Shown: piece after piece, positions 3,035-64,000 of the stretch
How the letters are laid out: the number at the start of each line of letters is the position of its first letter
Numbering within the stretch: the first letter of the stretch is position 1
Assembly: GCF_001194135.2 (NCBI RefSeq)
Contig: NC_068998.1
Span: 40,032,625 to 40,096,624, forward strand
DNA length: 64,000 nucleotides
From: Octopus bimaculoides
Lineage: Eukaryota
Reading direction: 5' to 3'
The notes under the pieces: model-generated
Seen by the model: only the letters and a program-made list of their open reading frames with translations
Database searches by the model: none
Told to the model about the DNA's origin: nothing
Translations under genes and position numbers: made by a program

Positions 3035-3092
<58 letters not shown>

Positions 3093-3102
3093 NNNNNNNN
3101 NN

Positions 3103-3159
<57 letters not shown>

Positions 3160-8579: not shown

Positions 8580-9225
8580 GTATATCATCATCATCATTTA
8601 ACATCTGTTTTCCATTCTCACATGAGTTGCATGGTTTGACAGGAACTGGCAAGCCAGAGGGCTGCACCAAGCTCCAGTGTCTGTTTTGGCAGGGCTTCTA
8701 TGGTTGGATGCCCTTTCATCATCATCATTAACATCCATTGTCCATGCTGGCATAGGTTGGATGGTTTGACCTGGACTTGTAAGCTGAGGGGCTGCACCAG
8801 ACTCCAGTCTGATTTGGCATGGTTTCTACAGCTGGATGCCCTTCCTAACGCCAACCACTCTGAGAGTGTAATGGGTACTTTTGCATGCCACTGGCATAGG
8901 TACCAGTTGCATGGCCTTAGTATCTGCAGCGGCTGCGTTTTCACTTGGTTTGACCTGGGCATGTAAGCTGAGGGGCTGCACCAGACTCCAGTCTGATTTG
9001 GGGATGGTTTCTATGGCTGGATGCCCTTTCTAACATCAACCACTCTGAGAGTGTAATGGGCGTTTTTACATGCCACTGGCACAGGTGCCAGTTGCATGGC
9101 CTTGGTATCTGCAATGACTGCATTTTCACTTGGCTTGATGGGTCTTCTTCTCAAACACAGCATATTGCTGAAGGTCTCGGTCATTTGTCATTGCCTTTGT
9201 GAGGCCCAACACTCGAAAGGTTATT
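8580..9225 (-). mobile_element. Cluster of nested and tandemly duplicated family-C copies
   Basis: Two (CAT)n tails (~8585, ~8716) and an internal direct duplication with ~184-bp period (GGTTTGACCTGG at 8763 and 8947). Confidence 0.75.
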
Positions 9226-13296: not shown

Positions 13297-13543
13297 ACAT
13301 NNNNNNNNNNNNNNNNNNNNNNNNNNNNNNNNNNNNNNNNNNNNNNNNNNNNNNNNNNNNNNNNNNNNNNNNNNNNNNNNNNNNNNNNNNNNNNNNNNNN
13401 AGAGAGAGAGAGAGAGAGAGAGAGTATGTGTGTGTGTTAGAGAAATATATGAGTGTACGTTTGTATATATGTGTCCATATAGCATATAGCTACATATGCA
13501 TGTATGCACATTTATGTAACTTTGTATGCATGCAGCTGTGTAC

Positions 13544-14495: not shown

Positions 14496-14668
14496 GGGTG
14501 CAGAGTGGCAAGCTGATGGAGTCCAGAGTGTTGCTTCCAAAACCACATGGTTCTGGGTTCAGTCTCCCTGCATGGCACATTTAGCAAGTGTCTTCAACTA
14601 TAGCCTCAGGCTGACCAAAATCCTGTGAGGGGATTTGGTAGACAGAAACTGAAAGAAACCTATTGTAT

Positions 14669-14700
<32 letters not shown>

Positions 14701-14970
14701 TTATGTGTGTCTGTGTTTGTCCCCACACCATTGCTTGGGAACCAATGTTGGTGTGTTTACGTCTCTGTAACATAGTGGTTTGGCAAAAGAGACCAATAGA
14801 ACAAGTAGTAAGTTTACAAAGAATAAGTCCTGGGGTTGATTTCTTGGACTAAAGAAACTTTTAAGGTGGTGCTTCAGCATAGCCACAGTTAGATGACTGA
14901 AACAAGTATCATCATCATCGTTTAACATCCGCTTTCCATGCTAGCATGGGTTGAAACAAGTAAAAGAATA
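14496..14970 (+). mobile_element. Family-A SINE, full length
   Basis: Collinear with the 2020-2430 copy. Confidence 0.8.
14909..14951 (-). mobile_element. 43-bp extreme 5'-truncated family-C retrocopy in the tail of a family-A SINE
   Basis: 11-bp TSD TGAAACAAGTA (14898-14908 and 14952-14962) flanks only the (CAT)n tail and terminal ~33 nt. Confidence 0.85.
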
Positions 14971-17019: not shown

Positions 17020-17466
17020 NNNNNNNNNNNNNNNNNNNNNNNNNNNNNNNNNNNNNNNNNNNNNNNNNNNNNNNNNNNNNNNNNNNNNNNNNNNNNNNNN
17101 NNNNNNNNNNNNNNNNNNNNNNNNNNNNNNNNNNNNNNNNNNNNNNNNNNNNNNNNNNNNNNNNNNNNNNNNNNNNNNNNNNNNNNNNNNNNNNNNNNNN
17201 NNNNNNNNNNNNNNNNNNNNNNNNNNNNNNNNNNNNNNNNNNNNNNNNNNNNNNNNNNNNNNNNNNNNNNNNNNNNNNNNNNNNNNNNNNNNNNNNNNNN
17301 NNNNNNNNNNNNNNNNNNNNNNNNNNNNNNNNNNNNNNNNNNNNNNNNNNNNNNNNNNNNNNNNNNNNNNNNNNNNNNNNNNNNNNNNNNNNNNNNNNNN
17401 NNNNNNNNNNNNNNNNNNNNNNNNNNNNNNNNNNNNNNNNNNNNNNNNNNNNNNNNNNNNNNNNNN
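17020..17466. other. Assembly gap (largest of six)
   Basis: N runs at 3093-3102, 13301-13400, 17020-17466, 35356-35365, 41407-41506 and 51651-51731, mostly inside microsatellites. Confidence 1.
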
Positions 17467-21918: not shown

Positions 21919-23482
21919 GTTAACATCCAACTGTCTATGCATTAAGATATTTTATTAGACAATTAAAAATTAAATGCTTTGTCTATAAATACATTGCTGT
22001 GACGATGATAGAATATGAACCAGTGACAGCTTTGTTTGATAGTCATGATATCCCTGTCCAGTCATTCATGTCCTCTACTCTCATATAAAACCAATAAAAC
22101 TTTGTTGTTACATCAGCACTAACCAATGAGGCCTCTATGCTGGGCTGCTTATTACAAGAATATTACTTCATAGGTTGTGTGGTAAGACTCCTTGGGTAAG
22201 ATACCTTTTTATGCTGGCTTCATTTGATGGCTGGTGTGTTGCTGTTGGAATTTTCTTCTAAATGTTCACAGAAATATTTGTTCCACATCACTAAGGTTCC
22301 AACATCAGATGCAAAAAGAAATGAAAGAAAAAATATATTGAATCAGTTTTAAAGAAATGGAAATTCCCACTCACCCACTCATACTTACCCACACACATTC
22401 ACATAAATCCATTCGTCGAAGAAAATGTTTATTTATATTTTATGATGACTGAATCCAGTCAAAAAGATGTGAGAGCTAACCTTATTGTTCATGTCTTTTT
22501 AGTTGTTGAAATCTCGCTATTCATTAATATAACGGCCATTGTAGCTGCCTTTGTATAGTGCACCATTGATTTGTGACCAGCTTGTGTGTATGTGTGTGTG
22601 ATACAGACATGATTAACAGCTCTCATCTTCTTTTGTCCCTTCAGGCTTTATATTGCAAGATGTTGCAGTAGCAGCAGGGGTGGTGGTGAACGGAACAAGG
22701 GAGGAGAAGGTCAGCAACAGTAGAACCAACAACAGCAACAACAGAAACATCATCAACTATTGAACTATTGTGGGTTGACAGTGGGTGAGGGTGTGGAGGA
22801 AAACTCTGCTCTGCTCATATCATCAGAGCATGGTCTACTGACTGACCCTTTTTCATCTGCTCATTGATACAGTTTTGCTAAGCATAATCTTTCAGCCAAA
22901 TCTGGCCACTATAATTGTCTATTATCTCTTTCGGTTCTACTGATTTGACGAATCTCTCATCTGCATCACAGGGTTATTATTATCATCGAAATGTCAGCCA
23001 GTCATCTTTCAGATGTTGCCAATGTATATATTGCAGATAGAACTGAAGAGAAGATGGACTTTTGAGATTTGCAGCCATAAGCCATTATCTGAGGTTATTT
23101 CCTCTTATTATAGCTTTTACTTAGTCCTTTAGTTTTTCGAGTAGAAATTGAATTATTTCAATTTACCAATTCTTCCTTAGATAATGCTATTCCAATAATT
23201 TACCACCTAACATTGTCAGCATTGACATTATACTAAATCATTCCACACCCACCTCTCTTTCTCCTTCTCTCTCCTTCTTTCTCATACACCTTCCTTACCT
23301 TTTAATGTATGTATATGTATGTGCATGTGTATGCATACATACACCTTTGTGTGTGTGTGTCTGTATATGTATATATATTAATATATATGTGTGTGTGTGT
23401 GTGTATGTGTATATACATGAATGTGCATTGTATATATGTGGGTATGTGTATATGTATGTATATATGTGTGTATATATATATG

Positions 23483-23520
<38 letters not shown>

Positions 23521-25317
23521 CATGCACATGCAGACACAACATATAATGTCCATGTATATTATATAAATGTGTATGTCTGTGAGAGTGGGTGTGTGTATGT
23601 GTGCGTGTAAATGTTTTAACAGAATATAGATGAGAGATTTATTGTTGATGCTAAGAACATTAACTGAGGACATAACAAGTAAATTTCTTCCTAAGTATGT
23701 CATTTACATTCCTACAACAAAATAAAGGAATGGAGTAAAAGTGTGCTAGGTAATTTAATATTTCTATTAGATCTGTATTTTATTTCAGTGATGTGTGTTA
23801 TTTTACTCAAGCACTATGTAATGACTGTGACCACAGTAGAATAACACCTTGCATTAGGGCTCCATCTCAGAATAAAGGTGTCTGACTAACTTTGAATCTC
23901 TGCTAACTAGACTATTTGTATCCTTTCAAACAGTGTCATTGTGATTATTACTACATATTACCAACGATAAAGTTTACAAATTTGGGTAAGCTCATTATGT
24001 ACTGTGGAGAGACTTGGTGAATACTGAGATTTCAAGCAAATCCCTTCTTTGATACAACAAACTTTTGAAGTAATATTCCAAATTTGTGAACTTTTGTTGA
24101 CAGAGACCTTCACTAGCTTCTTTGGATTCTGGTTTTTATTTAATGCTCCTCTTTAAGCAAAGGGTGAAGATGTACAACAGTTGAATTGGACTAGAAAACA
24201 CAGGATCAAACTCTAGAATAATTTGGTGGGTAGGGACCAAATAATATATTTTACTAAATGTCCAGATGTCCAAAATGAGATGTTGTTAATAAGATTATCA
24301 TTTTTAAATCTATAAAACTCATTCTTAGAGATGAAATAATCTTTTACTTTTTATTTTACATCCTCATTTGTTTCCCATCAGTTAGATGTCCAAACACATC
24401 ATCAAATGTCTTGTTCTTGGTTGTGTACAAAGAACCTTTATTTTTATACTAAGAGTGATAACTTTCTTCTCCACTAGGCCACTGATGAATATAACTGTAT
24501 CAGTAACCTGTCAAAACATAGTGCACATGTAATTACTAGAATTATTAATATTTAATGACACAGTCAATAGCCAGAAAAATGATAATCCTATTAAGATATT
24601 CTATATTTGTCAGCTTTTAAAAAATCACACACTCACAACTACTCTGCTTCATTCAGTGTTGAAATGACAAAAACGAAAAGAAAAAAAACAAAAACAACCA
24701 CTTCATTAGTGTTGTGAAACTGGAAGTGAGTGAGAGTCTGAGTTACTTACATGGACATGTGACAGCCACTGCACAGATGCACATGCATGCAGATTAGATG
24801 CTATTGTGGTTGCTATATTGGTTGTGATATATAATTTAGAATAGAAGGCTGAGTCATTACAGCATAAAACTGAATGTCTTGTGGTATTCTAGTTTCGTGA
24901 ACTTTGAGTTCCAGTCCCATCTGGGTCAACTTTAACCTTCCAAGGTCAATAAAGAGCCATTCCAGTATTAGGGCTGATTCTTCTTCTTTCTCACTTTCTC
25001 CCCTTCTCTCTGGAAGAAATTGGATGTGTTCAATCTTGGAGAGGGTTAGGCTATGTCAGGCTTTGATGCCCAAGATATACCATATGGCATAATGGCATGC
25101 TTGTGATACTGTCAGGTCTTGAGAAAGGAAGGAAGAATAATCTAGAGCGAAATTTTGGGGACAACAGTTTGGCATGTTTATGAGTTAATTTTTTACATTT
25201 GTAGAAAAGTAAATATTTGTAGGGAGAAGTTTGATAGTTTGAATGGCAAAGTGGACCTTCATTAGGTTTGAACCTATAAAGCCATTTACTGTAGTGCCTT
25301 ACACACACACACACACA

Positions 25318-26339: not shown

Positions 26340-27110
26340 ATGAGGAACCTTTTACTTATTCACTTGACAAACTGAAGATACTTCAGACCCCCAACAATTA
26401 TTGATATTCTACAATGCAAAGCTGAGGCCACAGTTGAGTATTGCTTTCACATCTGGGATGGTGCTGCGGCATGCACAAACATCCTAGATTGCATCCAGAA
26501 AAGTGCCACCTATCTGATTGGCATAAAGTCACTCACAGACACACTTCAGTCTTTGGTTCACTGTCTACTCCCTCTACCTTTTCTTTATTTATGCGCCCTT
26601 TTAAAGCCTAGCCAGGCTCATTGGCCCGGTTTCCTGGTTTCTATGGCATATGTGTTCCCCCCAGCTGGACGGGATGCTAGTCCATCACAACGTTACTCAA
26701 GAAACAAGAAGAAAGAGTGAGAGAAAGTTGGGGCGAAAGAGTACAACAGGGGTCGCCCCCCCCCCTGCCGGAGCCTTGTGGAGCTTTAGGTATTTTCACT
26801 CAATAAACACACACAACGCCCGGTCTGGGAATCGAAACCGCGATCCTCCGACCGTGAGTCCACTGCCCTAACCACTGGGCCTACCTTTTCTACCACTACT
26901 ATAATGGCTTCTGCACCATGGAGTGGCTGGACGAGTGCCACTGTCATTCAGAAATTCTTGTCTTACTCATCTCTCCTCTACTTTTCTTCACTGTTGTGTC
27001 CAATACCCCAAGCTCCAAACTAATCCTTGTGTCCAGTCCTTCCTTCCTAGAATGTCAACCTTCTGAAATTTCCTCCTTGCTCTTACATGAAGGTATTGGT
27101 TGACTGGCAA
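26340..27110 (+). mobile_element. Decayed LINE ORF2 C-terminal fragment (Jockey/CR1-group)
   Basis: PQQLLIFYNAKLRPQLEYCFHIWDGA..ILDCIQKSATYLIG..LQSL, continuing after the SINE as FYHYYNGFC...QSFLPRMSTF. Confidence 0.75.
26585..26880 (-). mobile_element. tRNA-derived SINE (family E), young copy inserted in a LINE fragment
   Basis: Head GGCCCAGTGGTTAGGGCAGTGGACTCACGGTCGGAGGATCGCGGTTTCGATTCCC on the minus strand, CpG-rich. 11-bp TSD CTACCTTTTCT (26574-26584 and 26881-26891). Confidence 0.9.
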
Positions 27111-29170: not shown

Positions 29171-30002
29171 TAATACTTCCTTTCTTTTCTTAATCTTGCT
29201 TGCCTTGTAGATGTTGTTTGTCAAAGTCAGCTTTTCCACTGAAAGGTCAGCTTATAATTCTAAACACAAAGAATTTCACAGAAGTCCTAGATGGCTGGCA
29301 CAGCAGAGGAGTAGAAGAGTGGTGAAAGGAGGGCATTGGGTGTTAGGTTAGAGCTGAATGTGGCAGCAACATAACCAAAATATATTTTATGCTTCATTGA
29401 TCGCATTGACTATTGATCTCTTACTGTAGCACAAGGGTCATACATTTATAGAAGGTATGTATAGGTGTAGGCATAGCTGTGAAGTTAAGAAGATTGCTTC
29501 ACAATCACATGGGTCTGGGCTTCAAATCATTGCATAGCACTTTGGGCAAGTGTTTTCTACTGTAGTATTGGTTCAACTAAAGACTAGTGTGCAAAATCTG
29601 GTAGATAGATACAGTGTGTGTATACACGTATGCACACATGTGCACATGTGTATATATTTATAAATGTATGTATAGTCATCATTGTTTTACATTCATTGTC
29701 TGTGTTGTCATGAGTTAGACAGGACCTCTAACTAAGATGTATTGGTAGTGAGCAGGCTTAGTCACCTTGTTCTCATTTCATTATTGCTTGGCTTTTATAG
29801 CTGGATGTCTTTCTTAACTGCAACCACTTTACAGAATAGATTATGATGGGTGCACGTTTTATGACACCATGAGAAATGTAGCCATGTCGTTGTTGCATAT
29901 AAAGAGGTATGTGTGTGGGTATACATACATACATACATACATACATACATACACACACCCATGCACACATACATACACATATCTTTTTATTCATGACATA
30001 TA

Positions 30003-30345
30003 TGGGTACAAGCATTGCTGTATGGCAAGAAGTTAGCTTCCTAACCACTTGTTTCTGGGTTCAGTCCCACTGCATGGCACCTTGGGCAAGTGTCTTCTGT
30101 TATAGCCTTGAGCTGACCAAAGTGTTGTGAGTGTATCTGATAGATGAATACTGAAAGAAGCCCATCATATATGTGTGTGTGTGTGTCTTTGTTTACTTCT
30201 CTATAACTTAGTGGTTCAGCAAAAGAGACTGATAGAATATGCACCAGGCTTTAAAAAGTACATGCTTGACTAAAACCTTTCAGTGTGGTGCCATGGCATG
30301 GCCACTGTACAAAGACTGAAACAAGTAAAATACATGAAATAAAAG
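30003..30345 (+). mobile_element. Family-A SINE
   Basis: Collinear with the 2020-2430 copy, with internal deletions. Confidence 0.75.
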
Positions 30346-35167: not shown

Positions 35168-35784
35168 GAGAAAATAGGAGGAAAGAGAGTCAAGAAAGGA
35201 CAACATCAGAAAATATGGGGCGGGAGTGAGATATTGAGAGGTAAAATGAATGGAGTGAATGAGTGGTAGGAGAAATTAATAATGATCTCTTCCATCAGTA
35301 CAAGGCCATGAATTTGGAGACATCTTGGCCAAAGTTGTAATTCAGTGCTAGCAGCNNNNNNNNNNCCTCTGTTCCCTGCCGCTCAGCTATTTATCTAATA
35401 AACTCTATTGACAAATCAATGAAAATGCCTCTGCATAGTTGTTCAACCTGTTTGAAGTAGCAGTCAAATTCTCCCTCCAATTACACTCTACTGTTTTCAA
35501 TGAAGAAGAATTTGTTGTACAATGCAGAGTCTCTAATGTACACACAAATAAATGGGATGGTCAAGGTTGGGATTCCTTTGATCATAGGTCTGTCTGCAAA
35601 ATACAGGTTGACCTGGGATTGAACAACAACATTATTAGCACTGTTGACTCAGCCACCTCAGGAACTCATAATAACTATGACCTTATCTGGTGCTTTGTTT
35701 TACCACCATCACTGCTGCCCCCAGCACCACCACCACCACCACCACTACCACCATCTGGCTCTTGGTTTCTCTTAGCAGAATCAC

Positions 35785-41299: not shown

Positions 41300-41506
41300 T
41301 CTTTGTAATATTTTTGTAATGTTTTTGCAGCTTTAATGATAAAGAATATATGTATGTATATATATATATACATATATATATACATACACACACACACACA
41401 TATATANNNNNNNNNNNNNNNNNNNNNNNNNNNNNNNNNNNNNNNNNNNNNNNNNNNNNNNNNNNNNNNNNNNNNNNNNNNNNNNNNNNNNNNNNNNNNN
41501 NNNNNN

Positions 41507-43410: not shown

Positions 43411-43810
43411 GGTACAGGCATGACTGTGTGGTAAGAAGTTTGCTTCCCAACTACCTGGTTCCAGGTTCAGTCCCACTGCATGGCACCTTGAGCAAGAGTT
43501 TCTACAATAACCTTAGACTAACCAAAGCCTTGTGAGTGGATTTGGTAGGTGGAAACTGAAAGAAGCTCATTATATGTATGTATGCATGTATATCTTTATA
43601 TGTGTATGTGGGTGTGTCTTTCTGTCTGTTTTTGCCAAAACCCACCCACTACTGCTTAACAACCAGCAAAAGAGACTGATAGAATAAGTATCAAGTTTTA
43701 AAAAAATAAGTACTTATGTTGATTCATTCAACTAAAATCCTTCAAGGTGGTGCCTGAATCCCTGGCTGCAGTCTAATGACTGAAACAAGTAAATGATAAA
43801 TGATAAAAGC
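43411..43810 (+). mobile_element. Family-A SINE, full length
   Basis: Collinear with the 2020-2430 copy. Confidence 0.8.
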
Positions 43811-45573: not shown

Positions 45574-46523
45574 CAGTTGTATCCCACCTACATGTAACAT
45601 TACACTTTTCACCCTCTCTACTCCAAGAAATCGAACTGCAACTCCTCTTCTAAATGCATCTTTCTCTTACTCACATCTCCTCTTCATAAATAATGATTGT
45701 TTTCCAATCCCTGTTCTTGCACTCACTGCTGTGCTCACTGTATTGCTGTTCCCTACACCCCCAACATCGACATCCACACCCTAATTTTCCAACCAGGTTC
45801 TATGCTCATATTTTTGTTACTTATGATTATACCCTAGCACTAGATCATCTCTCTTCTGTTCTCTCTTCAACTTTTGCTATTTCCTACTCTCTCCCCCTCT
45901 CTCTCTCTCTCTCTTTCCCTTTGGTCACTCTCTCTTTCTCCTTCTCTTGTTTTACCTCTGACTAGATAACCAAGCATCACCTTTACATCAGCACACTTGT
46001 TTCTAGCCGCTTTCTTGTACCACTCTCTCAATCTCTATCTCTTTTCTCTCTCTCTCACTGGGTAACCATGTACCTCCTCAGTAGCAAGACACCTATTTCT
46101 GCCTCTCTATTTCTGAGTTACCCTCTAACCCTTCATCATTTGATACTGGATGGCCTTCTCTAATGCCCCCGCTGTTGTGGCAAGACACCTGCTACTGTCT
46201 CTGTCTCTTTGTCACACTAACATTTCATCCTCGGACACAAGTTTATCTCTTCAAATACCCTGCCCCTCTCATACTTCCTTGTCTTGTGAGTTAATTGGTT
46301 TCCCTGCCATTGCTAGTGACACATTAAAAGCACTGTAAAGTGGTTGGTGTTTGGAAGGGCATTCCGTTTTAATAATCATGCCAAAACTAACCTTACCTGA
46401 GTTAGTGCCACGTGATAAGCACTCAGTCAACTCCACAACGTGGTTGGTGTTAGAAAGGGCATCCAGCGGTAAAATTCCTGCCAAGACAGACACAGTAGCC
46501 TAGAGTAGTTTTTTTCTTTCCAG

Positions 46524-46555
46524 TAGGTTGGTGCATAATTATTGCGGCTTTTTTG
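46524..46555 (+). mobile_element. Solo mariner terminal inverted repeat remnant (Hsmar1/MADE1-like)
   Basis: TAGGTTGGTGCATAATTATTGCGGCTTTTTTG resembles the cecropia-subfamily mariner TIR (TTAGGTTGGTGCAAAAGTAATTGCGG). No partner TIR was seen. Confidence 0.55.
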
Positions 46556-46586
46556 CAATAAATTTTATTCAACAAAATCAATAACT

Positions 46587-47225
46587 TATATATATATATA
46601 TAAATTCAGAAGAGTGGTACAACAAGGCACCAATATTTACTGGAAAATAGCAATCGATACAATTATGACGCTATTGTATAGCTTCACTGCGTATATACTG
46701 GTAAAAATGTGTGTATGCAACAAACATGAAAAATTTGTCTTACCTCTAGGAAGAACATTCGATAAATGGACAACCCAGAATAGGATAATGCAGGACTGGT
46801 TTCAGACTCTTCAAATACGTTTCACAACGTAAACTTGATCAGTCTTCATCAGCTGCATTTACCTAGACAATATTTCAAATGTTGCCACATCAATGCCAAG
46901 TATACTCGCCTGAACGCTTAGCCGTTAACAGAACTGAGAACAGTGAAGAAGTTATCAATGAAAAATATTTCAATACAAATGTATTAATTTCCAGCAAAAT
47001 AAAGCCCTATAAGGGTATATATATATATATAAATTCAGAAGAGTGGTACAACAAGGCACCAATATTTACTGGAAAATAGCAATCAATACAATTACGACAC
47101 TATCGTATAGCTTCACTGTGTATATACTGGTAAATATGTGTGTGTGCAACAAACATGAAAAACTTGTCTTACCTCTAGGAAGAACATTCGATAAATGGAC
47201 AACCCAGAATAGGATAATGCAGGAC
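46587..47225 (-). mobile_element. Retrozyme-like ~1.5-mer tandem repeat (429-bp period) carrying the hammerhead
   Basis: 46602-46796 and 47031-47225 are direct repeats (195 bp, 8 substitutions counted, mostly transitions), each preceded by (TA)n. The offset is 429 at both ends. On the minus strand the upstream copy starts at the GTC cleavage triplet (47223-47225). Confidence 0.7.
46781..46865 (-). ncRNA. Type I hammerhead ribozyme with intact catalytic core
   Basis: Minus strand reads UAGG-UA-AAUGCAG CUGAUGA AGACU-[32-nt hairpin capped by GUGA]-AGUCU GAAAC CA GUC^ CUGCAUU-AU-CCUA. Helix I is 7 bp + 2x2 loop + 4 bp. Helix II is 5 bp, extended by UCAAG/UUUGA and UACGUU/AACGUA. Helix III is minimal and quasi-palindromic (ACCAGU). 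Predicted cleavage is between 46794 and 46793. Confidence 0.85.
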
Positions 47226-47641
47226 CTTTATTTCCTTTATACAACTACTTGCATGGATTAATAACTATTTTATTTATATGATATGTGATGCTCAAATCTA
47301 TTTAGCACATTAAAAAAGGTCATTACCTAACCAAATTAAGATGTTTATGAGCCAGGCATTATTTCTGCTTATTTCTGATGTGAATGTATTAGCAAAATCC
47401 TTTTTATTAGCAACTTCATCAGGAGCCAGCTGCAGATTGGCAGTCATACTAAGAATAGATGTAAATATATACAAATCAGTGGGGGAACCTGAGGATTATA
47501 AGGAAGACCAAAAACCTCTTATTCAGTCGCAAACAACCTGTCTTGTAAATATTTAACCTTTATATTCTTATGTATTACAGCTATTGACTGTAATTAAATT
47601 TAAACTTATGTATTACTCACTGCCAACTTCATAGTTCTTAA

Positions 47642-47825: not shown

Positions 47826-48101
47826 TTAATATATCATAAGGGATCAAGCAGTATCAGCCCCCTTGGGAACCACTGCTGTAAGACAAACATTTCTGTCATA
47901 TTTACAGGCTACTGGTTTGTTAGGTGTCCAGCTGATTAATATAGATTCCAGTGCTTAATACTAGATCCAATTAATATGGATTCCAGTGGTTATTACTAGG
48001 TCCGAGACACAAAGAGATGAGTGTGTCAGATGGGTGTAAGTGGTGGTAGAATGCAACTAGTTTGTTCAGTAGAGGTTGCTTCTAGTAGTAGTAGAATAGA
48101 T

Positions 48102-50296: not shown

Positions 50297-50650
50297 TTGT
50301 GTGGTCAGAAGTTTGCTTCCTAACTTCATAGTTCCAAGTTCAGTCCATTGCATGGCACCCAGGCAAAATATCTTCTACTATAGTTCTGAGTCAACCAAAA
50401 CCTTGTGAATGGATTTGGTTGACTGAAACTGAAAGAAGCCCTTTACACATGTATGTTTATATCTGTGTTTGCATCTTTGTGTTTGTTCCTCATCACCGTT
50501 TGATAACTGGGATTGGTTTGCTTACGTTCCTGTAAATTAGCAGTACCACACTTAAAAATAGATAAGTACTTGGGCCAACTCATTTGACTAAAACCGTTCA
50601 AGCCAGTGGTCCCAGCATGGCTGCAGTCCAACCACTACAAGCAAGTAAAC
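50297..50650 (+). mobile_element. Family-A SINE
   Basis: Collinear with the 2020-2430 copy. Confidence 0.75.
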
Positions 50651-52843
50651 TATGAAAAACAACTGTTCTTTGTAATAAGGCTTTCTAACAATTCCTCAAA
50701 ATTGCATTTGTGAATTTAAATGACAACAGTATATTACTGGTATATATTTCATCAAACCAGACAAGATGAATGTATCTGAGTATGCACATGGAACATGGTA
50801 AAATTTATAAAAGCTAAGAAAGCATCTGTCGTAAGACTTTTCATTTGCATCTACCACACTCTCTTGCCATATACACCAGTCAGAGAAAAACTGCCTGCTC
50901 TTTGTAGCCAAAGAAAGGCAGTTGGGTAATCATAGTGTTTAGCACAGCTGGTAACCATTTCACAAAACAACACAAGTCAACAATGCTTGGAACAAATGCA
51001 TGCCGAGTAGTTTCATCACTTTGTGTGTATCCCAAATAAACATGGTTTGCACAGCACTGCTGTTCTTTTAGAGTTTATTATCTCTAACCAACAAAGCCCA
51101 CTACCCAGGTCAGTAGCATTATATACATATATATATACTTATATATATTGTATTTAAACTAGCAATAACTGGTAATACTCCAGATGATTTTAGATGAGTA
51201 TTGCTTTAAATTAATTTAATTCAAATTAATGTTTATCAATTATGTATCTCAACTACATAATTATGGAATTAATTATGCTCAGTCTAAATGAAACAGCTGT
51301 TGAAAGTAATTAAATCATGTTATATCTGTGGAATTTATGCTTCTCTCTCTCTATATATGTGTGTCTGTGTCTGTGTGTGTGTGTTTGTATATGCACATGC
51401 ACATACACATACAGAGTTGGCCAAAAGTCACCTGACAGTAAATCAAAATTCTGTATTGACTCAAATGGAAAAATGTGTCACTCAAGAAGGACTTCAGTTT
51501 GAACTATTTTCATGATGTTTCATATTTAGATGCTTTTATTAAATTCAGTCAGTTGGTAAACATAAATAAATCTTTGAATGAAATGGCTTTGGTTTATTGT
51601 CTTGTGACTTTTAGCCAACACTGTATATATATATATATATATATATATATNNNNNNNNNNNNNNNNNNNNNNNNNNNNNNNNNNNNNNNNNNNNNNNNNN
51701 NNNNNNNNNNNNNNNNNNNNNNNNNNNNNNNNGATAGATAGATAGATAGAGAAAGAAAAGGTAAACAAGAACAATTTTTAACTCAAGGCATCAATTGTAT
51801 TTGAACTGAATGAGTCTTTAGGCATCAAGTTCATATGAGTTGGAACCATTGCAACAGTGGTAATAGAGAAATTTGAAAAAGAACATTAGCAGGTCAAAGC
51901 TTATTGTTTTGCTCCAAGTACTGATTGAGGGAACCTCTGATCAAAGATATTGCACTTATGAGCAACCTGTGCTCTACTCAGACTTAATATCTTTCAGTTT
52001 TTGTCATCCATATGTACATTGCTATTTGTAGCTGCTTAAGTGGCCATACAGAAGCTCTCTCTCTCTCTCTCTCTCTCTGTCATTGGCTCAGTAGATCAAA
52101 GGTTGTAACAGTAGCTGAGTGAAAGCTGCATACCAGATAGATAGATATTTTTGCATTTAGCCGTGGTCTGAATATATTTAAATATTTGTTTTGAGGATAT
52201 CATTCCAGATATATGTATAGCATTTAAAGCACTGAATTTTTAATTAGATTTTAATGTAGTTGAACTCTTTGATTCTCAGAAGCCACCCAACAGATTTCAA
52301 TCAGTTATCATATTAAACTTCAGCTTACACGTCTTAGTGTTTGAGTGTATGATTGCCAGAGTGTTTATGTATATATGTGTAAGTGTGTTTATGTATGAGT
52401 GTCTGTAAGTGGACATGAACTTTCTTCATTCTGATGCTTATTATTCTGTTTGTAATTTACGTCCCACCTGGCTGTTGCCACTATATTATTCTTGTAATAA
52501 GATCTGTGGAATTCCATGTTTTCTTGGGATTATTTTCTAAAGTGGCAATGGCAGAAGTGGGAGAAGATGTGATAGATAGGTCATATCTGTTACTATTGGA
52601 AATGTTAAGAAAACACATTTCTGGTGTTGCTGCTGCTACAGTGGTGGAAGTGGTGATGGTGGTGGTGGGTTTTCCTTCCTGTGTGGACTTTGTCTACTGG
52701 AAGCTTTGAGCTTTGAGCAAGAAACACGATTACCTGAAATTTTTATCTTCAATTGAACAAATATAACACTGTGTGCACATCAGTGAACTCTATCTGTCTG
52801 TTTATCTATCCATCTCTTTCTCCCTCCTCTACCCTCTCTCTCT

Positions 52844-52892
<49 letters not shown>

Positions 52893-53739
52893 GAGAGAGA
52901 GAGAGAGAGACCTCCCCCACACACACACACATACACTAGCCTAATACCCACCATATGGGCAGAAAAGTTAAATATTAACTTAAATTTCTTTTTCATGTCT
53001 TAATAGAATATTCAAATGATTTCAGCTGCATGAACAGTCTACAACAGTCCCATGATTAAAATGGCTTGAAACATTTTAAGTGTCACTGACTTTTGTATGA
53101 ACATTGTAGTATATAAGAACAAAACTATTCAAAAACAAATACTTATTATGCAGTATTCATAATGTTAGGTTGGTGTAGTAGATAGTACAACTACACTGTT
53201 TACAGCAGATGCAGTGTGCGAATACTGCAGGTGATGTTACGACTTTTAGGCATGAGCATGACTTTGTGGTTAAGAAGTTCACTTCTCAACCACATGGTGG
53301 GAGGTCTAGGTTAAGGTTCACTGTATGGCACCTTTGGAAGTGTCTTCTATTTTATAGCCTGAGGTTGACCACAGCCTTATGAGGGGATTTGGTTGATAGA
53401 AATTGAAAAGAGTCCATCATATATGCATATAAATGCACATCTGTGTGTATGTGTGTTGCATGCACATTTGTGTGTTTGTGTTTAACATTTACACTTCTGA
53501 AATCACCAAGATACAAGCTGTGACATTGTTGTCATTTCTCCTGTTAAGAAATTGTCTACTGGTTTTGCAACTTTGGAAATGTATGCAATAAGAGCTCCCT
53601 TACTTGAAAACAGGTTGGGGATTGACAACAGGAAGGCCATCCAACTGTAAAATAACAGCTCAATAATACAATCATCTAACCCATACTAGTATGGAAAAGA
53701 AAAAAAGCATAAAAGCAAAAAGAGTAAAAAAGAAAAAAG

Positions 53740-55374
53740 TCCTAATCAATATTCTCTGCAAAAGAGTAATGTTCATTCTTTGTTTTTGCCATAACTAAAT
53801 CCACTTCAATTTTCTGAGAGAAGCATTTATTGTTCTGAGGTGGATGCTGACCTTCAAAAGACTTGTATTTTGAACTTTCAAGAAGAAATTACTGCTTTTG
53901 TATTTGGAATGTCAGCACATGATAACCTGTATTTCTGTAATCTGGTGTCCATAAAGGGAAACCTGTAAATATTTCCCTTTATGGATACCAGAAGCAATAA
54001 CAGCATAAATAGCTATTTTGTTAAGATGCTCAACAAAACTGTTCAGGTTCCATTGCCATGGTCATTAGCTGCATAAAAATTTTGGAGAAGTGCACTGGGA
54101 GCACATCCTTTAAAAAACAATCTGTATTAAATCATTCCACTCAAGCAATTTGTGTTTAAAATTTCAGTTGAGTAAAGATGTACCTTATTACTATTGAATG
54201 TTGTTTCATTGCTTAAATATGTTTTTATTTGATATGTAAAGCTGTCTATCAAAATGTCATTAACTTTTGTAATGCCATTGTTAGTTTGACAAGGAACTGC
54301 ATGCTCACAGATCTTGTCCACAGGTTTAGTTTTACTGGAGGTTTGCAAAACTATATTGTTGCAAAAACATCTTTGAATTTGCGCAGGAAACAAAATTACC
54401 TGAAATTTGTATCTTCAATTGACCTTACTAGTTTGGCTCTTGTAAAGTGTTCTCAACTTTTACCTATCCATATTTCTGGTGAGTTGCATCATCTGAGGTT
54501 CTTCCTAAAGCAAAGAGTTCTTGAAGCATTTATTCATTACTTCCGCATGACCTTCATTCATGTGGTACAACTGGAAGAATTTAGTACCAGTCACCAGAAA
54601 ACACCATTATAATTCTGTTAAAAAAGTTTATCAGTTTCATGGATATCATAAAATTTGTGATCCAGAAACATTAGCACACCGGACGAAATGCTTAGCAGTA
54701 TTTCGTCTGTCTTTATGTTCTGAGTTCAAATTCCACTGAGGTCGACTTTGCTTTCATCTTTTTGGGGTCGATAAATTAAGTACCAGTTGCATATTGAGGT
54801 TGATCTAATCGACTGGCCTCCTCTCTGCAAAATTTCGGGCCTTGTGCCTAGAGTAGAAAAGAATTTGTGATTCATTACCTCAAATACTTTCTTTTAACTG
54901 TAGTTACTTCATCTATGCTGACTAAACCTGTTCGGCTGATTAGCTAAGCAGTTGCACTCCTTTATGATATGTCACAATTTGAATGCCCAGTTATCTTTAA
55001 AGGCACTTTGAAGGGAGAATGTATAGTTTAGCCATTAGGTGTTGCAGCAATTTCTGGTGTTACTGTTGCAAGAGAAATTTTGTTTTCATATTGCATTCTG
55101 GCAAATATTGTTAAGAAAAAGACGCTTTCGTTATTTCTTTCTAGAATATCAAGTCAATAAATTGTCCACATACTTCCTTAACTGATGTGATAATGCATTT
55201 ATAAACAGGCTGCTGTTCTGTATTCAGTACAGGAATGCTGGTGTCCATTATCTGTTTTAGCTGTTCTGTATTATATTCTAACTCTTCTATGGTATGGTCC
55301 AATTGTATTTTCATAGTTTCCGAAAGCATTTTACTAAGAATCCTGTCTATTGGTTGTACTTTAACACAATGCAT
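53740..55374 (-). pseudogene. Helitron Pif1-family SF1 helicase domain, disrupted
   Basis: ORF 55141-55374 (ELEYNTEQL..LNTEQQPVY) precedes motif I. Motifs Ia/Ib/II lie at ~54.9-55.1 kb, motif III GDWY*ILPV at ~54.57-54.61 kb, and ORF 54127-54393 ends EILNTNCLSGMI. The C-terminal motifs are heavily decayed. Confidence 0.85.
54662..54861 (+). mobile_element. tRNA-derived SINE (family B), slightly 5'-truncated, inserted in the Helitron helicase
   Basis: B-box GAGTTCAAATTCC and body GAGGTCGACTTTGC..TTTGGGGTCGATAAATTAAGTACCAG. 10-bp TSD AATTTGTGAT (54652-54661 and 54862-54871). Confidence 0.9.
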
Positions 55375-55433
55375 CTTGTCTTCACCTAAAGTATAGGAGT
55401 GATAGTTCTAGACAGTTACGGGATTGGATGGTC

Positions 55434-57600
55434 TTATATATATAAAAGGATTGTTGTAAACACCTGGTGACATGCCTTTCCAACTGACACATTGGCTCTT
55501 TCTTTTATCATGTTATGACTTACTCTATCAGTACCAATTTTTGCAAGCTTCTTGATGACATAATTACATCTATTGTTCTTAAAACTTGTTGGTCTTGGTT
55601 TATAGTATAGTAGCATTCTTATGAAGTTGAGCTCTACTTAATGAGGTTTGAGATTGATGACAGGAATCCTGCCAGTCATATTATTCAGTCTGTCACTTTC
55701 CACTACACCTCCAAACATCTTTCTCTTAATTACTTCATATTTTCTTGCAAACTTTTTATTGAAGCATCTGCAATATTGGAAGATATCTAAATAAAGTATA
55801 TTGTTTGCTTTTAGAGCAGCAACATTAAGTTCAAAGAGTCCACTCAACGTAGTCACCACTAGCCTGTAGTTTGCCACATCATTTGCTTCATTAGGTTCAA
55901 GAAGAACAATTTGATCATACTGTAAATGCACTGGAAGCTTTTGTATAGGAGAATATCAATTGTTATATGGGAAATTTCATTGAGGCCCTAATAAATGATT
56001 GTGATACTGATATATCATGTGTTTGAATCTCATCTAAAACCTGCTCTCCCCTTGACTTTTGAACTAGGACATGAACCAATCCTTTGGTAACATGCTTGTA
56101 GAAGTTCTTCACTGCCTTTATGCTCTTCATACTTTGTTTTGAGTGTAAGGTTATACAATACGACCTTACAACTGAACTTTGCAGGTTTGCACAATGGAAG
56201 ATGCACATTTATGTTCTGTTAGGTTTCTATAAAAAGGCTTGGAATTTTCAGTCAACAGTCTAACTTGAAAATTGTTTTAGAATCCTTTTTCACATTTATA
56301 ATCTGTTCCTTCACCCTTTCACCAGACATACATAGATTATTAAAACTAGTATTTCTACCAGACTAAGGATCATATTCTTTTTAACTTCATCAAACAACAA
56401 AGAATGCCTTTCTTTATCTGGAATCTCAGCACAAATAAATCAATCAATATAAGCCAATTTGGGATTTATTTCCTTGTGTGAAGATAACAAGAACTTGAGC
56501 ATGGCAGTCCTTCCTTCAGGTCCTCTTTCATACATATATAAAGCAATTACTTTTCCAAGGTAATCATCTTCAAGTAAATCATGAAAAGCTATTTCAGATT
56601 TTGTGGAAACAATGTTACCATATTATCTGGTTGATCATTTGGTTTTTAAACCTGGTAAAAGGGTTGACTTAAATCTTATTCCAATTTGGATTTGTTATAA
56701 AAGTAATGAAGAAACCTGGCTTATCATAGTATCTGATGATACTCGTGAAATCTTGAAATGCTTCTGCATACCACCTTGGTGATTCATACAAACTTACTGG
56801 TAATATGATTTTGTTTCCTCACTCTGATTTAATTGTCTCTCTTCACACAACATCCACAAGTCTTTTGTACTTGTCTGCACAAATTGATTTTTTTGTTATA
56901 ATTATACCACTTTAATCTTTGCTTTATTATCTTAATAAAGCCATCAATTGCATATTGCTGGAAGTTTTCACAATTTCAAAATTACATTGAAATTTTTTTG
57001 AGAGTGTACATTCAATCTGTAGTAGCTGTACAGTATGGAAGAAGTCTGGTTATTATTTCTGATACTCTTAACATATAAATTACTAGCAAAAGGAAACCTG
57101 AAAACCTGATGTGAAGGACATTATAACTTTGATGTATTCCATTTATATTTCAAGCTGCTTCTGTATTTATGTATTACTACAGCCAGACTTTCTATTGCTT
57201 CATTGAACAGCAGAGCAACCACTTTGTATTGGGCATGAAATAGTGCTCCTTATGGTCACCATTTTGGCTTCTTGTTCTCAGTACTACTTTAATCTCTTCT
57301 CTTTTGGTGATCTCAGTAGCAAACTTGAAATCTCTTTGGTTCAATTTAAGGTATCTTGCAACTTAACTATCACATCAAAGTTCATTGTCGGATTTTTTTT
57401 CGTATGTTGTAAAAAAAAAAATCTATGCAATCTTTAGTCACACATTTTCACATGGAATAAGTGACCTTTTGATGCAACGAGTTTGACTGTAACCTGATAT
57501 TGTTGTTTCCTGATAACCAAGAGAAGCCATGGGATTGTTGTAACTTGTGATTTTGTCAAGGAAATGAATCCATCTGGAGGGATGAATTTAATATTACCTT
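55434..57600 (-). pseudogene. Helitron Rep (HUH endonuclease) domain and adjacent conserved region, disrupted
   Basis: Motif 1 region FITFITNPNW (~56.68 kb). The HUH motif is frameshifted as GGACTGCC-ATGCTCAA (~56.49-56.51 kb). SIKAVKNFYKHVTKG..DEI..FPI (ORF 55963-56208) and VHL..TTL..FELN..GRI (ORF 55638-55931) follow. Confidence 0.9.
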
Positions 57601-62250: not shown

Positions 62251-64000
62251 TTAAATGAATTAGAGTATACTACTGGCACTATATTTTTTCAACTTTGGAA
62301 AGATGAATAGGAAAATTCACCTCAGCACAATTTGAACTCAGAATGAAAAGGGACATAACTAATTACTGCATGGCATTTCATTGGATGCTTTACCAATCCA
62401 CTCTTCTCCACCAGCAACATTATTTTGCCAATCTACTCCCTTCAACAACAATAATGATTGTTTATAATTTAGAGACAAGACCAGTAGTTTTGAAGAAAAG
62501 GTGTTAATTGATGCCATGGACCCCAGTACTTGATTGGTATTTTATTTTATCATCCCTGAAAGGATGATAAGCAAAGTTGATGGTAATTTGAATTCAGAAA
62601 GTAAAGAACCAGAACAGTATCCACCAAGCAAGAAATTTGAGGAGTGGGTTTGTTCGTTTGAATCAACCACAGCACTGTGCTGGTGTTTTATTTTATTGGC
62701 CTCAGAAGGATAAAAGGTGAAGTTGACTGTGGTGGATTTGAACTCAGTCTGTAAATAGTTGGAATGAATACTATGAGGTATTTTATTGGATGTTTTAATT
62801 ATTTTGCTGTAATTTTAACACAAGGTCACCTATTTTGAGTAATGAGTATAGAATATTTAATTCAACTCTCTAGGTGTTTATTTCATCTCAGTAGGAATGA
62901 TAATGTAACCTTTAGTTAAATAAAAACATAGGATAATGTAACTTAAATACTGCAGTACTCTGTTACTTCTGAGACCCAACCACACATACACAAATATTTA
63001 TTTGTTATTGTACCTTTGCCTATAAATATGTTTATATATATATATAAGTTTGTATAGGTGTTAATACATACACATATATAAGTTTACATCTATATGTGGT
63101 TGAATATTGCAAACAACTCCACTCATGTAATTTTGGCTGGTCTCAAGAGAACCTCCAAGTTCTGCATTTTTAACCATGGCTACACTCACACATATATAAG
63201 GTTTGAATGTGTATATGATACCAACTCTGAATGGAAACAAACTTTCTGACAATTAAGCACTATTCAGTTGCAGACCTGACTAGATATGGGTATATAGTAT
63301 ATGTAATGTAATATATATGTATGGGGGTATTAATAGTTTGTATATATATTTATGTAAATATAATGTGTGTGTGTAATCATCACTTAACATCCATGTTCCT
63401 GGTTGGTATGGGTTGAATGGCTTGACAATCTGATATGTATCCAAGGACTGCATGCACTTTGTGCTCATAATCCACATACACTTCATGCTCCAGTGTCTGA
63501 TTTGGTGCGATTTCTATGGTTGGATGCCCTTCTTAATACCAACCACTTTACACCATGGGTAAGGTACATTTTTCGTTCCAGCACTACTGTTGAGTTTGCC
63601 ATGCAGCTCGCAGAACTACAAACCCTGATGGGAGCAGTCAGCTTCATGCTAGGGGACAAGAGGATTGAACTATGAGAAGTGGGGAGGGGTGCACATTGCA
63701 GGTCTTATAGAGGATCTGCATGGTCACTATATGTATACATTGTAGCACTGTGATATTTATTAATATATGATAACAGAAAAAACACAATCAACTCAGTACT
63801 GTTACAAAGTGGATATTTATGTGTTAAACAGTATCAATATGTTTGTGACACAATTTTTAAAGATCATGATGTACACACATGGATAGTCAAGTGCATATGG
63901 TTTGAATAATAAACAATGGTGAAACTGTGCAGTAATGGCAGTGTAAGTAACATACTGTACTATTTAAAGTACATATGCAGACACACATACACACTCACAT

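What the first reader, a model, noticed from the sequence alone, without database searches (positions are those of the whole stretch)
46587..47225. Hammerhead ribozyme with an intact core in a 429-nt tandem repeat: candidate cephalopod retrozyme / circRNA element
Seen: all conserved hammerhead nucleotides (CUGAUGA, GAAA, GUC) with 11 bp of helix I and a long GUGA-capped helix II on the minus strand (46781-46865). It sits between two ~96%-identical 195-bp repeats spaced 429 bp apart, and the upstream copy begins at the GUC cleavage triplet, so the element boundary coincides with the predicted self-cleavage site. Established: metazoan non-LTR retrozymes (newt satellite 2, Schistosoma Sm-alpha) are short tandem repeats with type I hammerheads that release monomers which circularise. 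Hammerheads with a tiny palindromic helix III, as in Penelope-like elements, cleave as dimers. Inference: this is a >1-mer retrocopy of a 429-nt self-cleaving, possibly circular RNA. ACCAGU is one CpG-type change from the perfect palindrome ACCGGU. I cannot check whether the family is already described.
Basis: partly seen in the sequence, partly recalled or inferred. Interest (0 to 1): 0.88.

Follow-up and report, generated by a model that had tools for sequence, protein, structure and literature searches.

The report
Hammerhead ribozyme in retrozyme-like repeat
A small self-cutting RNA motif (a hammerhead ribozyme) really is encoded here, inside a one-and-a-half-copy 429-bp repeat that looks like a worn genomic copy of an already known kind of mobile element (a retrozyme), so the feature is real but ordinary.

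Summary
On the minus strand, 46866-46774 encodes a type I hammerhead. All core nucleotides are present, helix I has 7+4 bp, and a 42-nt helix II is capped by GUGA. Helix III is vestigial: one A-U pair around a CCAG loop. It lies in a 639-bp block of 1.49 units with a 429-bp period. The 210-bp repeats are 96% identical, and the upstream copy starts at the GUC triplet.

My descriptor found only this motif in the window. It found nothing of equal quality in 300 shuffles. The Rfam model scores only 22.7 bits against a threshold of 52, with E=0.4 for the whole window.

The best reading is a decayed retrocopy of a non-autonomous, Penelope-type retrozyme whose ribozyme works as a dimer. Five of the eight differences between the copies are CpG decay, which fits CCAG being a decayed CCGG palindrome. 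With CCGG restored, the predicted dimer structure is a double hammerhead.

The locus holds one complete ribozyme, so it cannot release a monomer itself. No other family copy was found in the window, and none could be retrieved from elsewhere. Copy number, covariation, expression and host taxon therefore remain untested. I class it as a new member of a known kind, of modest interest.

The parts
46587..47225 (-). Whole element: 1.49 units of a 429-bp period. On the minus strand it reads copy A1, then the unique segment with the hammerhead, then copy A2.
47016..47225 (-). Upstream 210-nt copy (A1). It begins GUC|CUGCAUUAUCC, which is an orphan cleavage site plus the helix I 3' strand with no catalytic core upstream. 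It ends in (TA)8 at 47031-47016.
46797..47015 (-). 219-nt single-copy segment of the unit. Its 3' part carries the 5' strand of helix I, the catalytic core and helix II.
46587..46796 (-). Downstream 210-nt copy (A2). It begins with G16.2-U16.1-C17 and the helix I 3' strand, and ends in (TA)8 at 46602-46587.
46774..46866 (-). Type I hammerhead ribozyme motif. CUGAUGA is 46852-46846, helix II is 46845-46804 with the GUGA loop at 46825-46822, GAAA is 46803-46800, the CCAG loop is 46799-46796 and UC is 46795-46794. Predicted cleavage is between 46794 and 46793.
46577..46586 (-). Candidate target-site duplication, 3' copy: AGTTATTGAT, immediately after the terminal (TA)8. Weak evidence.
   Evidence: p about 0.02, post hoc
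47257..47266 (-). Candidate target-site duplication, 5' copy: AGTTATTAAT. It is separated from the element start by 31 nt (47256-47226) that show no similarity to the unit.

Best explanation
This is a decayed genomic retrocopy of a short (429-nt), non-coding, non-autonomous retroelement of the metazoan non-LTR retrozyme type. Such elements are now regarded as Penelope-like-element (PLE) dependents.

Proposed mechanism:
1. The source element is transcribed as a multimer. Shown here: the inserted block has a 429-nt period. Inferred: that the template was a multimeric or circular RNA.
2. Its type I hammerhead has a vestigial helix III (A-U plus a tetraloop, ancestrally the palindrome CCGG). It therefore cleaves after GUC mainly when two ribozymes pair through helix III as a double hammerhead. 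Inferred from thermodynamic modelling and from the newt/axolotl and PLE precedents.
3. A PLE-type reverse transcriptase started cDNA synthesis internally, at or next to the (UA)8 tract 210 nt downstream of a cleavage site, on an AT-rich target. It copied back through one full unit and stopped at or near the next hammerhead cleavage site. This gives 1.49 units. Inferred from the anatomy and from Frangieh 2024.
4. Since insertion the two copies have diverged by 3.8%, mostly by CpG decay. One such change turned CCGG into CCAG.

The locus has one complete ribozyme and a weakened dimer helix. It is most likely a dead copy, not a present-day source of circular RNA.
For: - Motif: the core and helices are present and unique in the window. 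The descriptor gives 1 hit, against 2 relaxed and 0 equal-quality hits in 300 shuffles. The fold has z = -4.6. The best Rfam match is a hammerhead family; the site is identical to its consensus over UGCAGCUGAUGA, GAAAC and GUCCUGCA.
- Periodicity: a 210-nt repeat at 429-nt spacing. A simple tandem duplication would give two whole units, so this pattern points to copying from a multimeric or circular template.
- Boundary: the 5' end lies 3-4 nt from the cleavage site.
- Non-coding: no Pfam match for the element's open frames and no PLE reverse transcriptase or GIY-YIG nearby.
- Composition: GC is 34%. Element CpG o/e is 0.65 against 0.18 for the window, so the element is younger than its surroundings.
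- Self-pairing: the 429-nt monomer folds at -116.4 kcal/mol with z = -4.4. The body without the ribozyme has z = -2.9.
- Decay: 7 of 8 differences are transitions and 5 of 8 are at CpG.
- Dimer: with CCGG the dimer minimum-energy structure is the double hammerhead at -62.7 kcal/mol. The extant CCAG gives -52.6.
- Literature: retrozyme definition and mussel elements of 350-390 bp (PMC7229834). A helix III of 1-2 bp with a palindromic 2-4 nt loop acting as a dimer (PMC4209133). PLE partial tandems, tails and (TA)n/AT-rich targets (PMC8557442). Internal initiation of reverse transcription (PMC11167929). Retrozymes as PLE derivatives with many monomeric or partial copies (bioRxiv 10.64898/2026.07.22.740005).
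Against: - There is only one locus. No other copy of the unit is in the 64-kb window and none could be retrieved elsewhere. Mobility, family conservation and helix covariation are therefore untested.
- The Rfam score is 22.7 bits, far below the gathering score of 52, and E = 0.4 at window scale.
- The 10.1-11.1 pair is A-U, not the highly conserved G-C.
- Helix II is unusually long and has no obvious loop for the canonical loop-loop contact.
- The minimum-energy monomer fold pairs core CUG with loop CAG, which would be an inactive conformer.
- The homology starts at GUC or GGUC, not at the first nucleotide after the cleavage site. A template with a self-cleaved 5' end does not explain the boundary exactly.
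- The candidate target-site duplication is weak (p about 0.02, post hoc). The 31-nt 'tail' is not element-derived.
- For the one PLE tested in vitro, hammerhead cleavage was not needed for insertion.
Confidence: 0.6

Rival explanations
1. A chance hammerhead-like motif lies inside an unrelated local duplication, for example repair or slippage between (TA)n tracts. It would have no ribozyme history and no mobile element behind it.
For: The Rfam score is sub-threshold, with E = 0.4 for the window. The relaxed descriptor does occur in shuffles at about 0.007 per window. Extrapolated to a gigabase genome, that predicts some chance motifs (my inference). Both copies end in (TA)8, a recombination-prone tract. 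Only one locus is known.
Against: No shuffle reached helix I >=7 bp together with helix II >=5 bp. The motif also has 4 more helix I pairs and about 11 more helix II pairs. It matches the conserved metazoan helix I sequence CUGCAG/CUGCA. The repeat boundary falls within 4 nt of the cleavage site, about a 2% prior. A repeat of 210 nt at 429-nt spacing is not what a simple tandem duplication gives. The element's CpG content, 3.5-fold above background, marks it as a younger insert.
Confidence: 0.1
2. It is a fragment of an autonomous Penelope-like element: a solo pseudo-LTR or heavily 5'-truncated partial tandem of a coding PLE, not a dedicated non-coding retrozyme.
For: PLE insertions are typically 5'-truncated partial tandems with hammerheads in the pLTR, AT-rich or (TA)n targets and 30-40-bp tails. 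The dimer-type helix III and the long helix II are PLE-like traits.
Against: The template period is 429 nt, far shorter than a PLE unit of 3 kb or more, and it contains no ORF. No reverse transcriptase or GIY-YIG remnant was found in the stop-free segments of the window. Helix I is long (7+4 bp), unlike the 4-5 bp of minimal PLE hammerheads. The putative tail has no similarity to the unit.
Confidence: 0.17
3. It is a SINE-like, pol III-transcribed retroposon carrying a hammerhead, as in Schistosoma Sm-alpha, mobilised by a LINE rather than a PLE.
For: The size (about 430 nt), the AT-rich sequence, the type I hammerhead and the microsatellite-like 3' end are compatible with this.
Against: ARAGORN finds no tRNA-like region. 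I saw no convincing A and B boxes in the right order by eye. There is no poly(A) or LINE-type tail. The 1.49-unit periodic structure is not what SINE insertions look like.
Confidence: 0.05
4. It is a host-exapted, functional cis-acting ribozyme, like the intronic HH9/HH10 of amniotes, conserved for RNA processing at this locus.
For: The best Rfam match is HH9, and the helix I sequence is nearly identical to the HH9 consensus.
Against: The score is far below the HH9 threshold. The helix III loop has decayed. The two flanking copies are diverging at CpG sites, a neutral-looking pattern. No gene context was detected in the window.
Confidence: 0.03

Closest known systems
Metazoan non-LTR retrozymes (Cervera & de la Pena 2020, PMC7229834), e.g. 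Mytilus galloprovincialis repeats of 350-390 bp
   Same: A short non-coding unit of a few hundred bp with low GC, a type I hammerhead and a highly self-paired predicted RNA. The mollusc examples also lack the canonical loop 1/loop 2 contacts. Genomic copies range from monomers or partial units to multimers.
   Different: Only 1.49 units with one complete ribozyme. At 429 bp the unit is slightly above the 170-400 nt first described, but inside the 51-972 bp range of the 2026 preprint. No expression, circularity or copy-number data. Invertebrate retrozyme hammerheads were reported to cleave well as monomers, whereas this one has the dimer-type helix III.
Newt satellite 2 / axolotl HHR_Amex1 hammerheads
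   Same: Type I topology. Helix III is reduced to a single base pair capped by a tetraloop that is palindromic (here, one step from palindromic). Activity is expected as a double hammerhead in multimeric transcripts.
   Different: The loop here is CCAG, not a perfect palindrome. Helix II is 42 nt instead of about 4 bp plus a loop. The 10.1-11.1 pair is A-U. The host is different (probably a cephalopod) and there is no sequence similarity outside the core and helix I.
Hammerheads in the pseudo-LTRs of Penelope-like elements (Cervera & de la Pena 2014, PMC4209133; Craig 2021, PMC8557442; Frangieh 2024, PMC11167929)
   Same: A dimer-type helix III with palindromic character, a longer than usual helix II, a partial-tandem insertion architecture, an AT-rich or (TA)n insertion context, and a 3' end consistent with internal initiation of reverse transcription.
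   Different: No RT/GIY-YIG ORF in the unit or nearby. Helix I is much longer than in minimal PLE hammerheads. [quoted passage not shown] The tail and target-site duplication are unconvincing.
Rfam Hammerhead_HH9 (RF02275) and the Hammerhead clan CL00010
   Same: It is the best covariance-model match. The site is identical to the consensus over UGCAG-CUGAUGA, GAAAC and GUC-CUGCA.
   Different: 22.7 bits against a gathering score of 52. There is a 33-nt insertion in helix II. Helix III is shortened to 2 unaligned nt. The outer part of helix I is shortened. There is no intronic or amniote context.
Schistosoma Sm-alpha SINE-like hammerhead repeats
   Same: A dispersed or tandem short retroposon with a type I hammerhead in a lophotrochozoan-grade invertebrate.
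   Different: No pol III promoter or tRNA-like part was detected. The helix II and helix III architecture differs.

Membership tests
Hammerhead ribozyme, type I | Conserved core: C3 U4 G5 A6 N7 G8 A9, G12 A13 A14, A15.1-U16.1, H17 | tested here: met
   CUGAUGA at 46852-46846, GAAA at 46803-46800, U at 46795 and C at 46794
Hammerhead ribozyme, type I | Helices I and II flank the core in type I order, with helix I open | tested here: met
   Helix I has 7 bp, a 2x2 loop and 4 bp. Helix II has 5 bp, a tandem GA/AG, 6 bp, a bulge, 5 bp and a GUGA loop. The motif is unique in the window, with none of equal quality in 300 shuffles.
Hammerhead ribozyme, type I | Helix III, either in cis or as a palindrome that allows a double hammerhead | tested here: inconclusive
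   In cis there is only A15.1-U16.1 around the CCAG loop. As a dimer, ACCAGU forms 4 of 6 pairs. The modelled double hammerhead is -52.6 kcal/mol, against -62.7 when CCGG is restored.
Hammerhead ribozyme, type I | G10.1-C11.1 pair at the base of helix II (highly conserved) | tested here: not met
   The pair is A10.1-U11.1 (AGACU...AGUCU). It still pairs, but it is not the canonical pair (PMC4209133).
Hammerhead ribozyme, type I | Covariance-model score at or above the Rfam gathering threshold | tested here: not met
   No hit at gathering. The best is HH9 at 22.7 bits against 52, with E = 0.0062 in 1 kb and E = 0.4 in 64 kb.
Hammerhead ribozyme, type I | Helix covariation across family members | not testable with these tools
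   [quoted passage not shown] No eukaryotic genome collection is available. The metagenome and viral scans gave only chance hits.
Hammerhead ribozyme, type I | Self-cleavage after H17 | not testable with these tools
   This needs in vitro transcription or mapping of RNA 5' ends.
Non-LTR retrozyme | Tandem repeats, from dimers to multimers, with a hammerhead in each unit | tested here: not met
   The block is 1.49 units with one complete hammerhead. The upstream copy keeps only the GUC and the helix I 3' strand. Partial or monomeric derivative copies are described for such families.
Non-LTR retrozyme | Short non-coding unit (about 170-400 nt; 51-972 bp in the 2026 survey) with low GC | tested here: met
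   The period is 429 bp and GC is 34%. The open frames have no Pfam match and no protein homologues.
Non-LTR retrozyme | Highly self-paired monomer RNA | tested here: met
   The 429-nt monomer folds at -116.4 kcal/mol with z = -4.4. The body without the ribozyme has z = -2.9. These are predictions only.
Non-LTR retrozyme | Multiple genomic copies (a repetitive family) | not testable with these tools
   There are none elsewhere in the 64-kb window. The source genome is not searchable here.
Non-LTR retrozyme | Expression as linear and circular RNA of unit length | not testable with these tools
Penelope-like element (autonomous) | Single ORF with a telomerase-like RT and a GIY-YIG endonuclease between pseudo-LTRs | tested here: not met
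   The 219 nt between the repeats hold no ORF. Of the window's 150 stop-free segments of 70 aa or more, I judged none RT- or GIY-YIG-like by eye. The Pfam scan of ten of them gave only a sub-threshold Mos1 HTH far away.
Penelope-type insertion signature | 5'-truncated partial tandem, a 30-40-bp tail at one end, an AT-rich or (TA)n target | tested here: inconclusive
   The partial tandem and an AT-rich 3' junction are present. The candidate duplication AGTTATTRAT has p about 0.02, post hoc. The 31-nt spacer is not similar to the unit (p = 0.58).

The most novel reading that the evidence does not exclude
The locus is a young offshoot of a still-active, undescribed cephalopod retrozyme family. 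On this reading, the 5' end of its genomic copies falls inside the helix III loop or at the cleavage site of the hammerhead, and the 3' end falls at an internal (UA)n tract. If that pattern recurred across many copies, it would be direct genomic evidence for two things: that ribozyme-processed multimeric RNA is the template, and that reverse transcription starts at a defined internal site, as shown in vitro for one Penelope-like element. That would link ribozyme cleavage mechanistically to PLE-type integration. The unusually long, GNRA-capped helix II would then be a selected family trait.
Probability: 0.15. Interest if true: 0.55.

Novelty: new member of a known kind. Interest (0 to 1): 0.3.

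Why it matters
If confirmed as a family, it would add cephalopods to the animals known to carry hammerhead retrozymes. So far the held literature offers only a count of 235 Rfam hammerhead hits in the giant squid genome (PMC6962438). It would also give a mollusc example of the dimer-dependent helix III otherwise described for amphibians and Penelope-like elements. The junction anatomy here could help test how these elements are copied: the 5' end lies next to the cleavage site and the 3' end at an internal (UA)8. As it stands, this is one decayed copy of a known class. It is useful for annotation (a repeat, not a gene or regulator) but not surprising.

Tried and rejected
1. Rfam at gathering thresholds on the whole window gave no hit. 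In E-value mode the only relevant match was the sub-threshold HH9 hit. About 110 spurious miRNA, snoRNA and other matches came mostly from microsatellite-rich, low-complexity sequence.
2. A search for more copies in the window found only (TA)n noise (blastn word size 7, E<=10). The hammerhead pattern and descriptor scans found only this site.
3. Family copies elsewhere. The exact pattern GTCTGAAACCRGTCCTGCA gave 27 loci in metagenome contigs and 1 in viral contigs. All are chance matches, mostly in GC-rich, apparently microbial DNA, with no CUGAUGA upstream.
4. I translated all frames of the element and searched the protein collection, hoping for spurious ORF calls on related contigs. Nothing was found.
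5. Taxon and source. Exact look-ups of two window ORFs found nothing on record.
6. A PLE-type 'tail' derived from the unit is rejected, because the 31-nt spacer has no similarity to the unit. The target-site duplication is kept only as a weak candidate.
7. Autonomous PLE, tRNA-SINE and exapted-ribozyme readings were considered and down-weighted.
8. The bacterial promoter/terminator scan is irrelevant for a eukaryotic locus and showed no enrichment.

Full report
**What is in the sequence.**
Reading 46300-47500 on the minus strand and running the repeat finder confirm a 210-nt direct repeat. The copies are at 47225-47016 and 46796-46587 and start 429 nt apart. They are 96% identical, with 8 mismatches. 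Each copy ends in an identical (TA)8 tract. A 219-nt single-copy segment (47015-46797) lies between them. The block is therefore 639 bp, or 1.49 units of a 429-bp period.

The 3' end of the single-copy segment and the first nucleotides of the downstream copy spell a type I hammerhead:
- helix I 5' strand: UAGG-UA-AAUGCAG
- CUGAUGA at 46852-46846
- a 42-nt helix II at 46845-46804: AGACU/AGUCU, a tandem GA/AG, 6 bp, a UU bulge, 5 bp and a GUGA loop
- GAAA at 46803-46800
- CCAG at 46799-46796
- U16.1 at 46795 and C17 at 46794
- helix I 3' strand: CUGCAUU-AU-CCUA

Predicted cleavage is between 46794 and 46793. The upstream copy begins GUC-CUGCAUU, so the repeat homology starts 3 nt before the cleavage position. 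Position 47226, just upstream, is G, where the downstream copy has the A of CCAG.

**Is it more than chance?**
I wrote an RNAmotif-style descriptor requiring helix I >=5 bp, CUGANGA, helix II >=4 bp, GAAA, up to 12 nt, and then UH.
- It finds exactly one site on both strands of the window, this one.
- In 300 dinucleotide-preserving shuffles of the whole window it hit twice. It never hit with helix I >=7 bp and helix II >=5 bp.
- The 96-nt region folds at -30.5 kcal/mol, z = -4.6.
- Under random 5' truncation, a boundary within about 4 nt of the cleavage site has roughly a 2% prior (my arithmetic).

Against this, Rfam reports nothing at gathering thresholds. In E-value mode the best match is Hammerhead_HH9 at 22.7 bits against a gathering score of 52. 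E is 0.0062 for a 1-kb search and 0.4 for the full window. The alignment shows why. The site is identical to the consensus over UGCAG-CUGAUGA, GAAAC and GUC-CUGCA. It is penalised for a 33-nt insertion in helix II, a helix III reduced to 2 unaligned nucleotides, and a shortened outer helix I.

The covariance model alone would not call this a ribozyme. Descriptor statistics plus the boundary coincidence make chance unlikely.

**Ribozyme anatomy and likely activity.**
Helix III in cis is a single A15.1-U16.1 pair around a CCAG tetraloop. This is the architecture described for most metazoan type I hammerheads: a 1-2 bp stem with a 2-4 nt palindromic loop, active as a dimer (PMC4209133). It is also described for axolotl HHR_Amex1 (PMC7229834).

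Thermodynamic modelling gives:
- hammerhead-constrained monomer: -27.2 kcal/mol
- minimum-energy monomer: -30.5 kcal/mol. This fold pairs core CUG with loop CAG, which would be an inactive conformer.
- two copies of the extant sequence forced into a double hammerhead: -52.6 kcal/mol
- with the loop as CCGG: the unconstrained dimer minimum-energy structure is the double hammerhead, with a 6-bp intermolecular helix III, at -62.7 kcal/mol

Two further departures from canon may lower activity. The 10.1-11.1 pair is A-U rather than the conserved G-C. The very long helix II offers no obvious loop at the usual distance for the helix I/helix II tertiary contact.

**Evidence of decay and relative age.**
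Seven of the eight differences between the copies are transitions. Five are CpG<->TpG/CpA. The window is strongly CpG-depleted, with o/e 0.18. The element has o/e 0.65, with 12 CpGs in 639 bp. The element is therefore younger than its surroundings and is losing CpGs. The G at 47226 in the upstream junction agrees with it, but that is only one nucleotide of evidence.

**What kind of element.**
- The unit has no ORF with a Pfam match and no protein homologues in any frame.
- GC is 34%.
- The 429-nt monomer, taken from cleavage site to cleavage site, folds at -116.4 kcal/mol with z = -4.4. It closes through helix I. The body without the ribozyme still has z = -2.9.

These are the described features of metazoan non-LTR retrozymes. 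Mussel elements of 350-390 bp are the closest described mollusc example (PMC7229834).

A repeat of 210 nt at 429-nt spacing is not what a simple tandem duplication produces, since that would give two whole units. It is what copying from a multimeric or circular 429-nt template gives. The partial tandem resembles Penelope-like-element insertions, which are 5'-truncated partial tandems with AT-rich or (TA)n targets (PMC8557442). The only PLE studied in vitro starts reverse transcription at an internal site of its RNA (PMC11167929). A 2026 preprint argues that animal retrozymes are non-autonomous PLE derivatives and notes many monomeric derivative copies.

My proposed history is as follows. A multimeric transcript served as template. 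cDNA synthesis started at or beside the (UA)8 tract, 210 nt downstream of a cleavage site. Copying ran through one unit and ended at the next ribozyme. This history is inferred, not shown. The 3-4 extra nucleotides at the 5' end do not fit a template whose 5' end was made by self-cleavage.

**What this locus can do now.**
It holds one complete ribozyme and one orphan cleavage site with no catalytic core upstream. A transcript of this locus could be cut once at most. It could not release a unit-length RNA. With the weakened dimer helix, it is most likely a dead copy.

**Flanks.**
AGTTATTGAT follows the element directly (46586-46577). AGTTATTAAT lies 31 nt upstream of it (47266-47257). A match this good occurs in about 2% of controls, and I found it post hoc. 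The intervening 31 nt show no similarity to the unit (p = 0.58). A PLE-type tail plus target-site duplication is therefore only a weak possibility.

None of the window's 150 stop-free segments of 70 aa or more looked RT- or GIY-YIG-like by eye. A Pfam scan of ten of them gave only a sub-threshold Mos1 HTH. There is no tRNA-like sequence.

**What could not be tested.**
- No second copy of the unit or of any hammerhead is in the window.
- The searchable nucleotide collections are microbial or viral. The exact-pattern scans gave 28 chance hits with no CUGAUGA upstream.
- Exact look-ups of two window ORFs found nothing on record, and a protein search with transposon-like fragments found nothing. 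The host taxon is therefore unverified.
- The only pointer to the taxon is a repeat I recalled from memory as an abundant Octopus SINE-like element. It matches 12 places in the window at 69-86% identity. That is a lead, not a test.

**Comparison with the literature and verdict.**
Type I hammerheads in short repeats are well known in animals, including molluscs. For cephalopods the held literature gives only a count of 235 Rfam Hammerhead_1 hits in the giant squid genome (PMC6962438). Searches for cephalopod retrozymes found nothing more specific.

However, this is a single decayed 1.5-unit copy of a known class, with the family-level and experimental tests still open. I rate it a new member of a known kind, with modest interest.

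Noticed in passing
window 2020-2298, 14531-14787, 43415-43621, 30017-30192, 50298-50544, 8152-8310 and six more: Twelve copies, at 69-86% identity, of a roughly 280-bp repeat that I recalled from memory as the abundant Octopus SINE-like element. This is the only pointer, and a memory-based one, to a cephalopod origin.
   Followed up: partly
window 46337-46387 and 46437-46487: Two 51-nt direct repeats 100 nt apart at 76% identity (GTGGTTGGTGTT..GGGCAT.C..). They lie about 100 nt downstream of the element on its minus strand. Similar translated motifs recur at about 8600-9200 and 63390-63700, so this is probably another short interspersed repeat.
   Followed up: no
whole window: There is strong CpG depletion (o/e 0.18 at 35% GC), while the hammerhead element has o/e 0.65. 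The background value is low for an invertebrate and may deserve a check against the genome-wide figure.
   Followed up: partly
window 4136-4384 and 4478-4696 (+): A mariner/Mos1-type transposase remnant. HTH_48 scores 21.6 bits, just under its cut-off of 24.1. By eye, the next open segment also looks like mariner N-terminal sequence.
   Followed up: partly
window 26376-26717 (+) and 55144-56208 (-): By eye, these stop-free segments resemble a non-LTR reverse-transcriptase C-terminus and a helicase-like transposon protein. Neither had a Pfam match at E<=0.01 or a homologue in the protein search.
   Followed up: partly
window 3093-3102, 13301-13400, 17020-17466, 35356-35365, 41407-41506, 51651-51732: Runs of N (assembly gaps), most of them next to microsatellites.
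   Followed up: no
window 23456-23526, 29908-29978, 52829-52906, 3035-3143 and many more: About 110 sub-threshold Rfam matches, mostly to miRNA families (mir-297, mir-466, mir-1277 and others) plus some snoRNA-type families. Those I checked lie on TA/CA-type microsatellites, so I take them for low-complexity artefacts rather than genes.
   Followed up: yes
window 47935-48003: A 35-bp tandem duplication (2 copies, 88% identity), about 700 bp from the element and unrelated in sequence.
   Followed up: no
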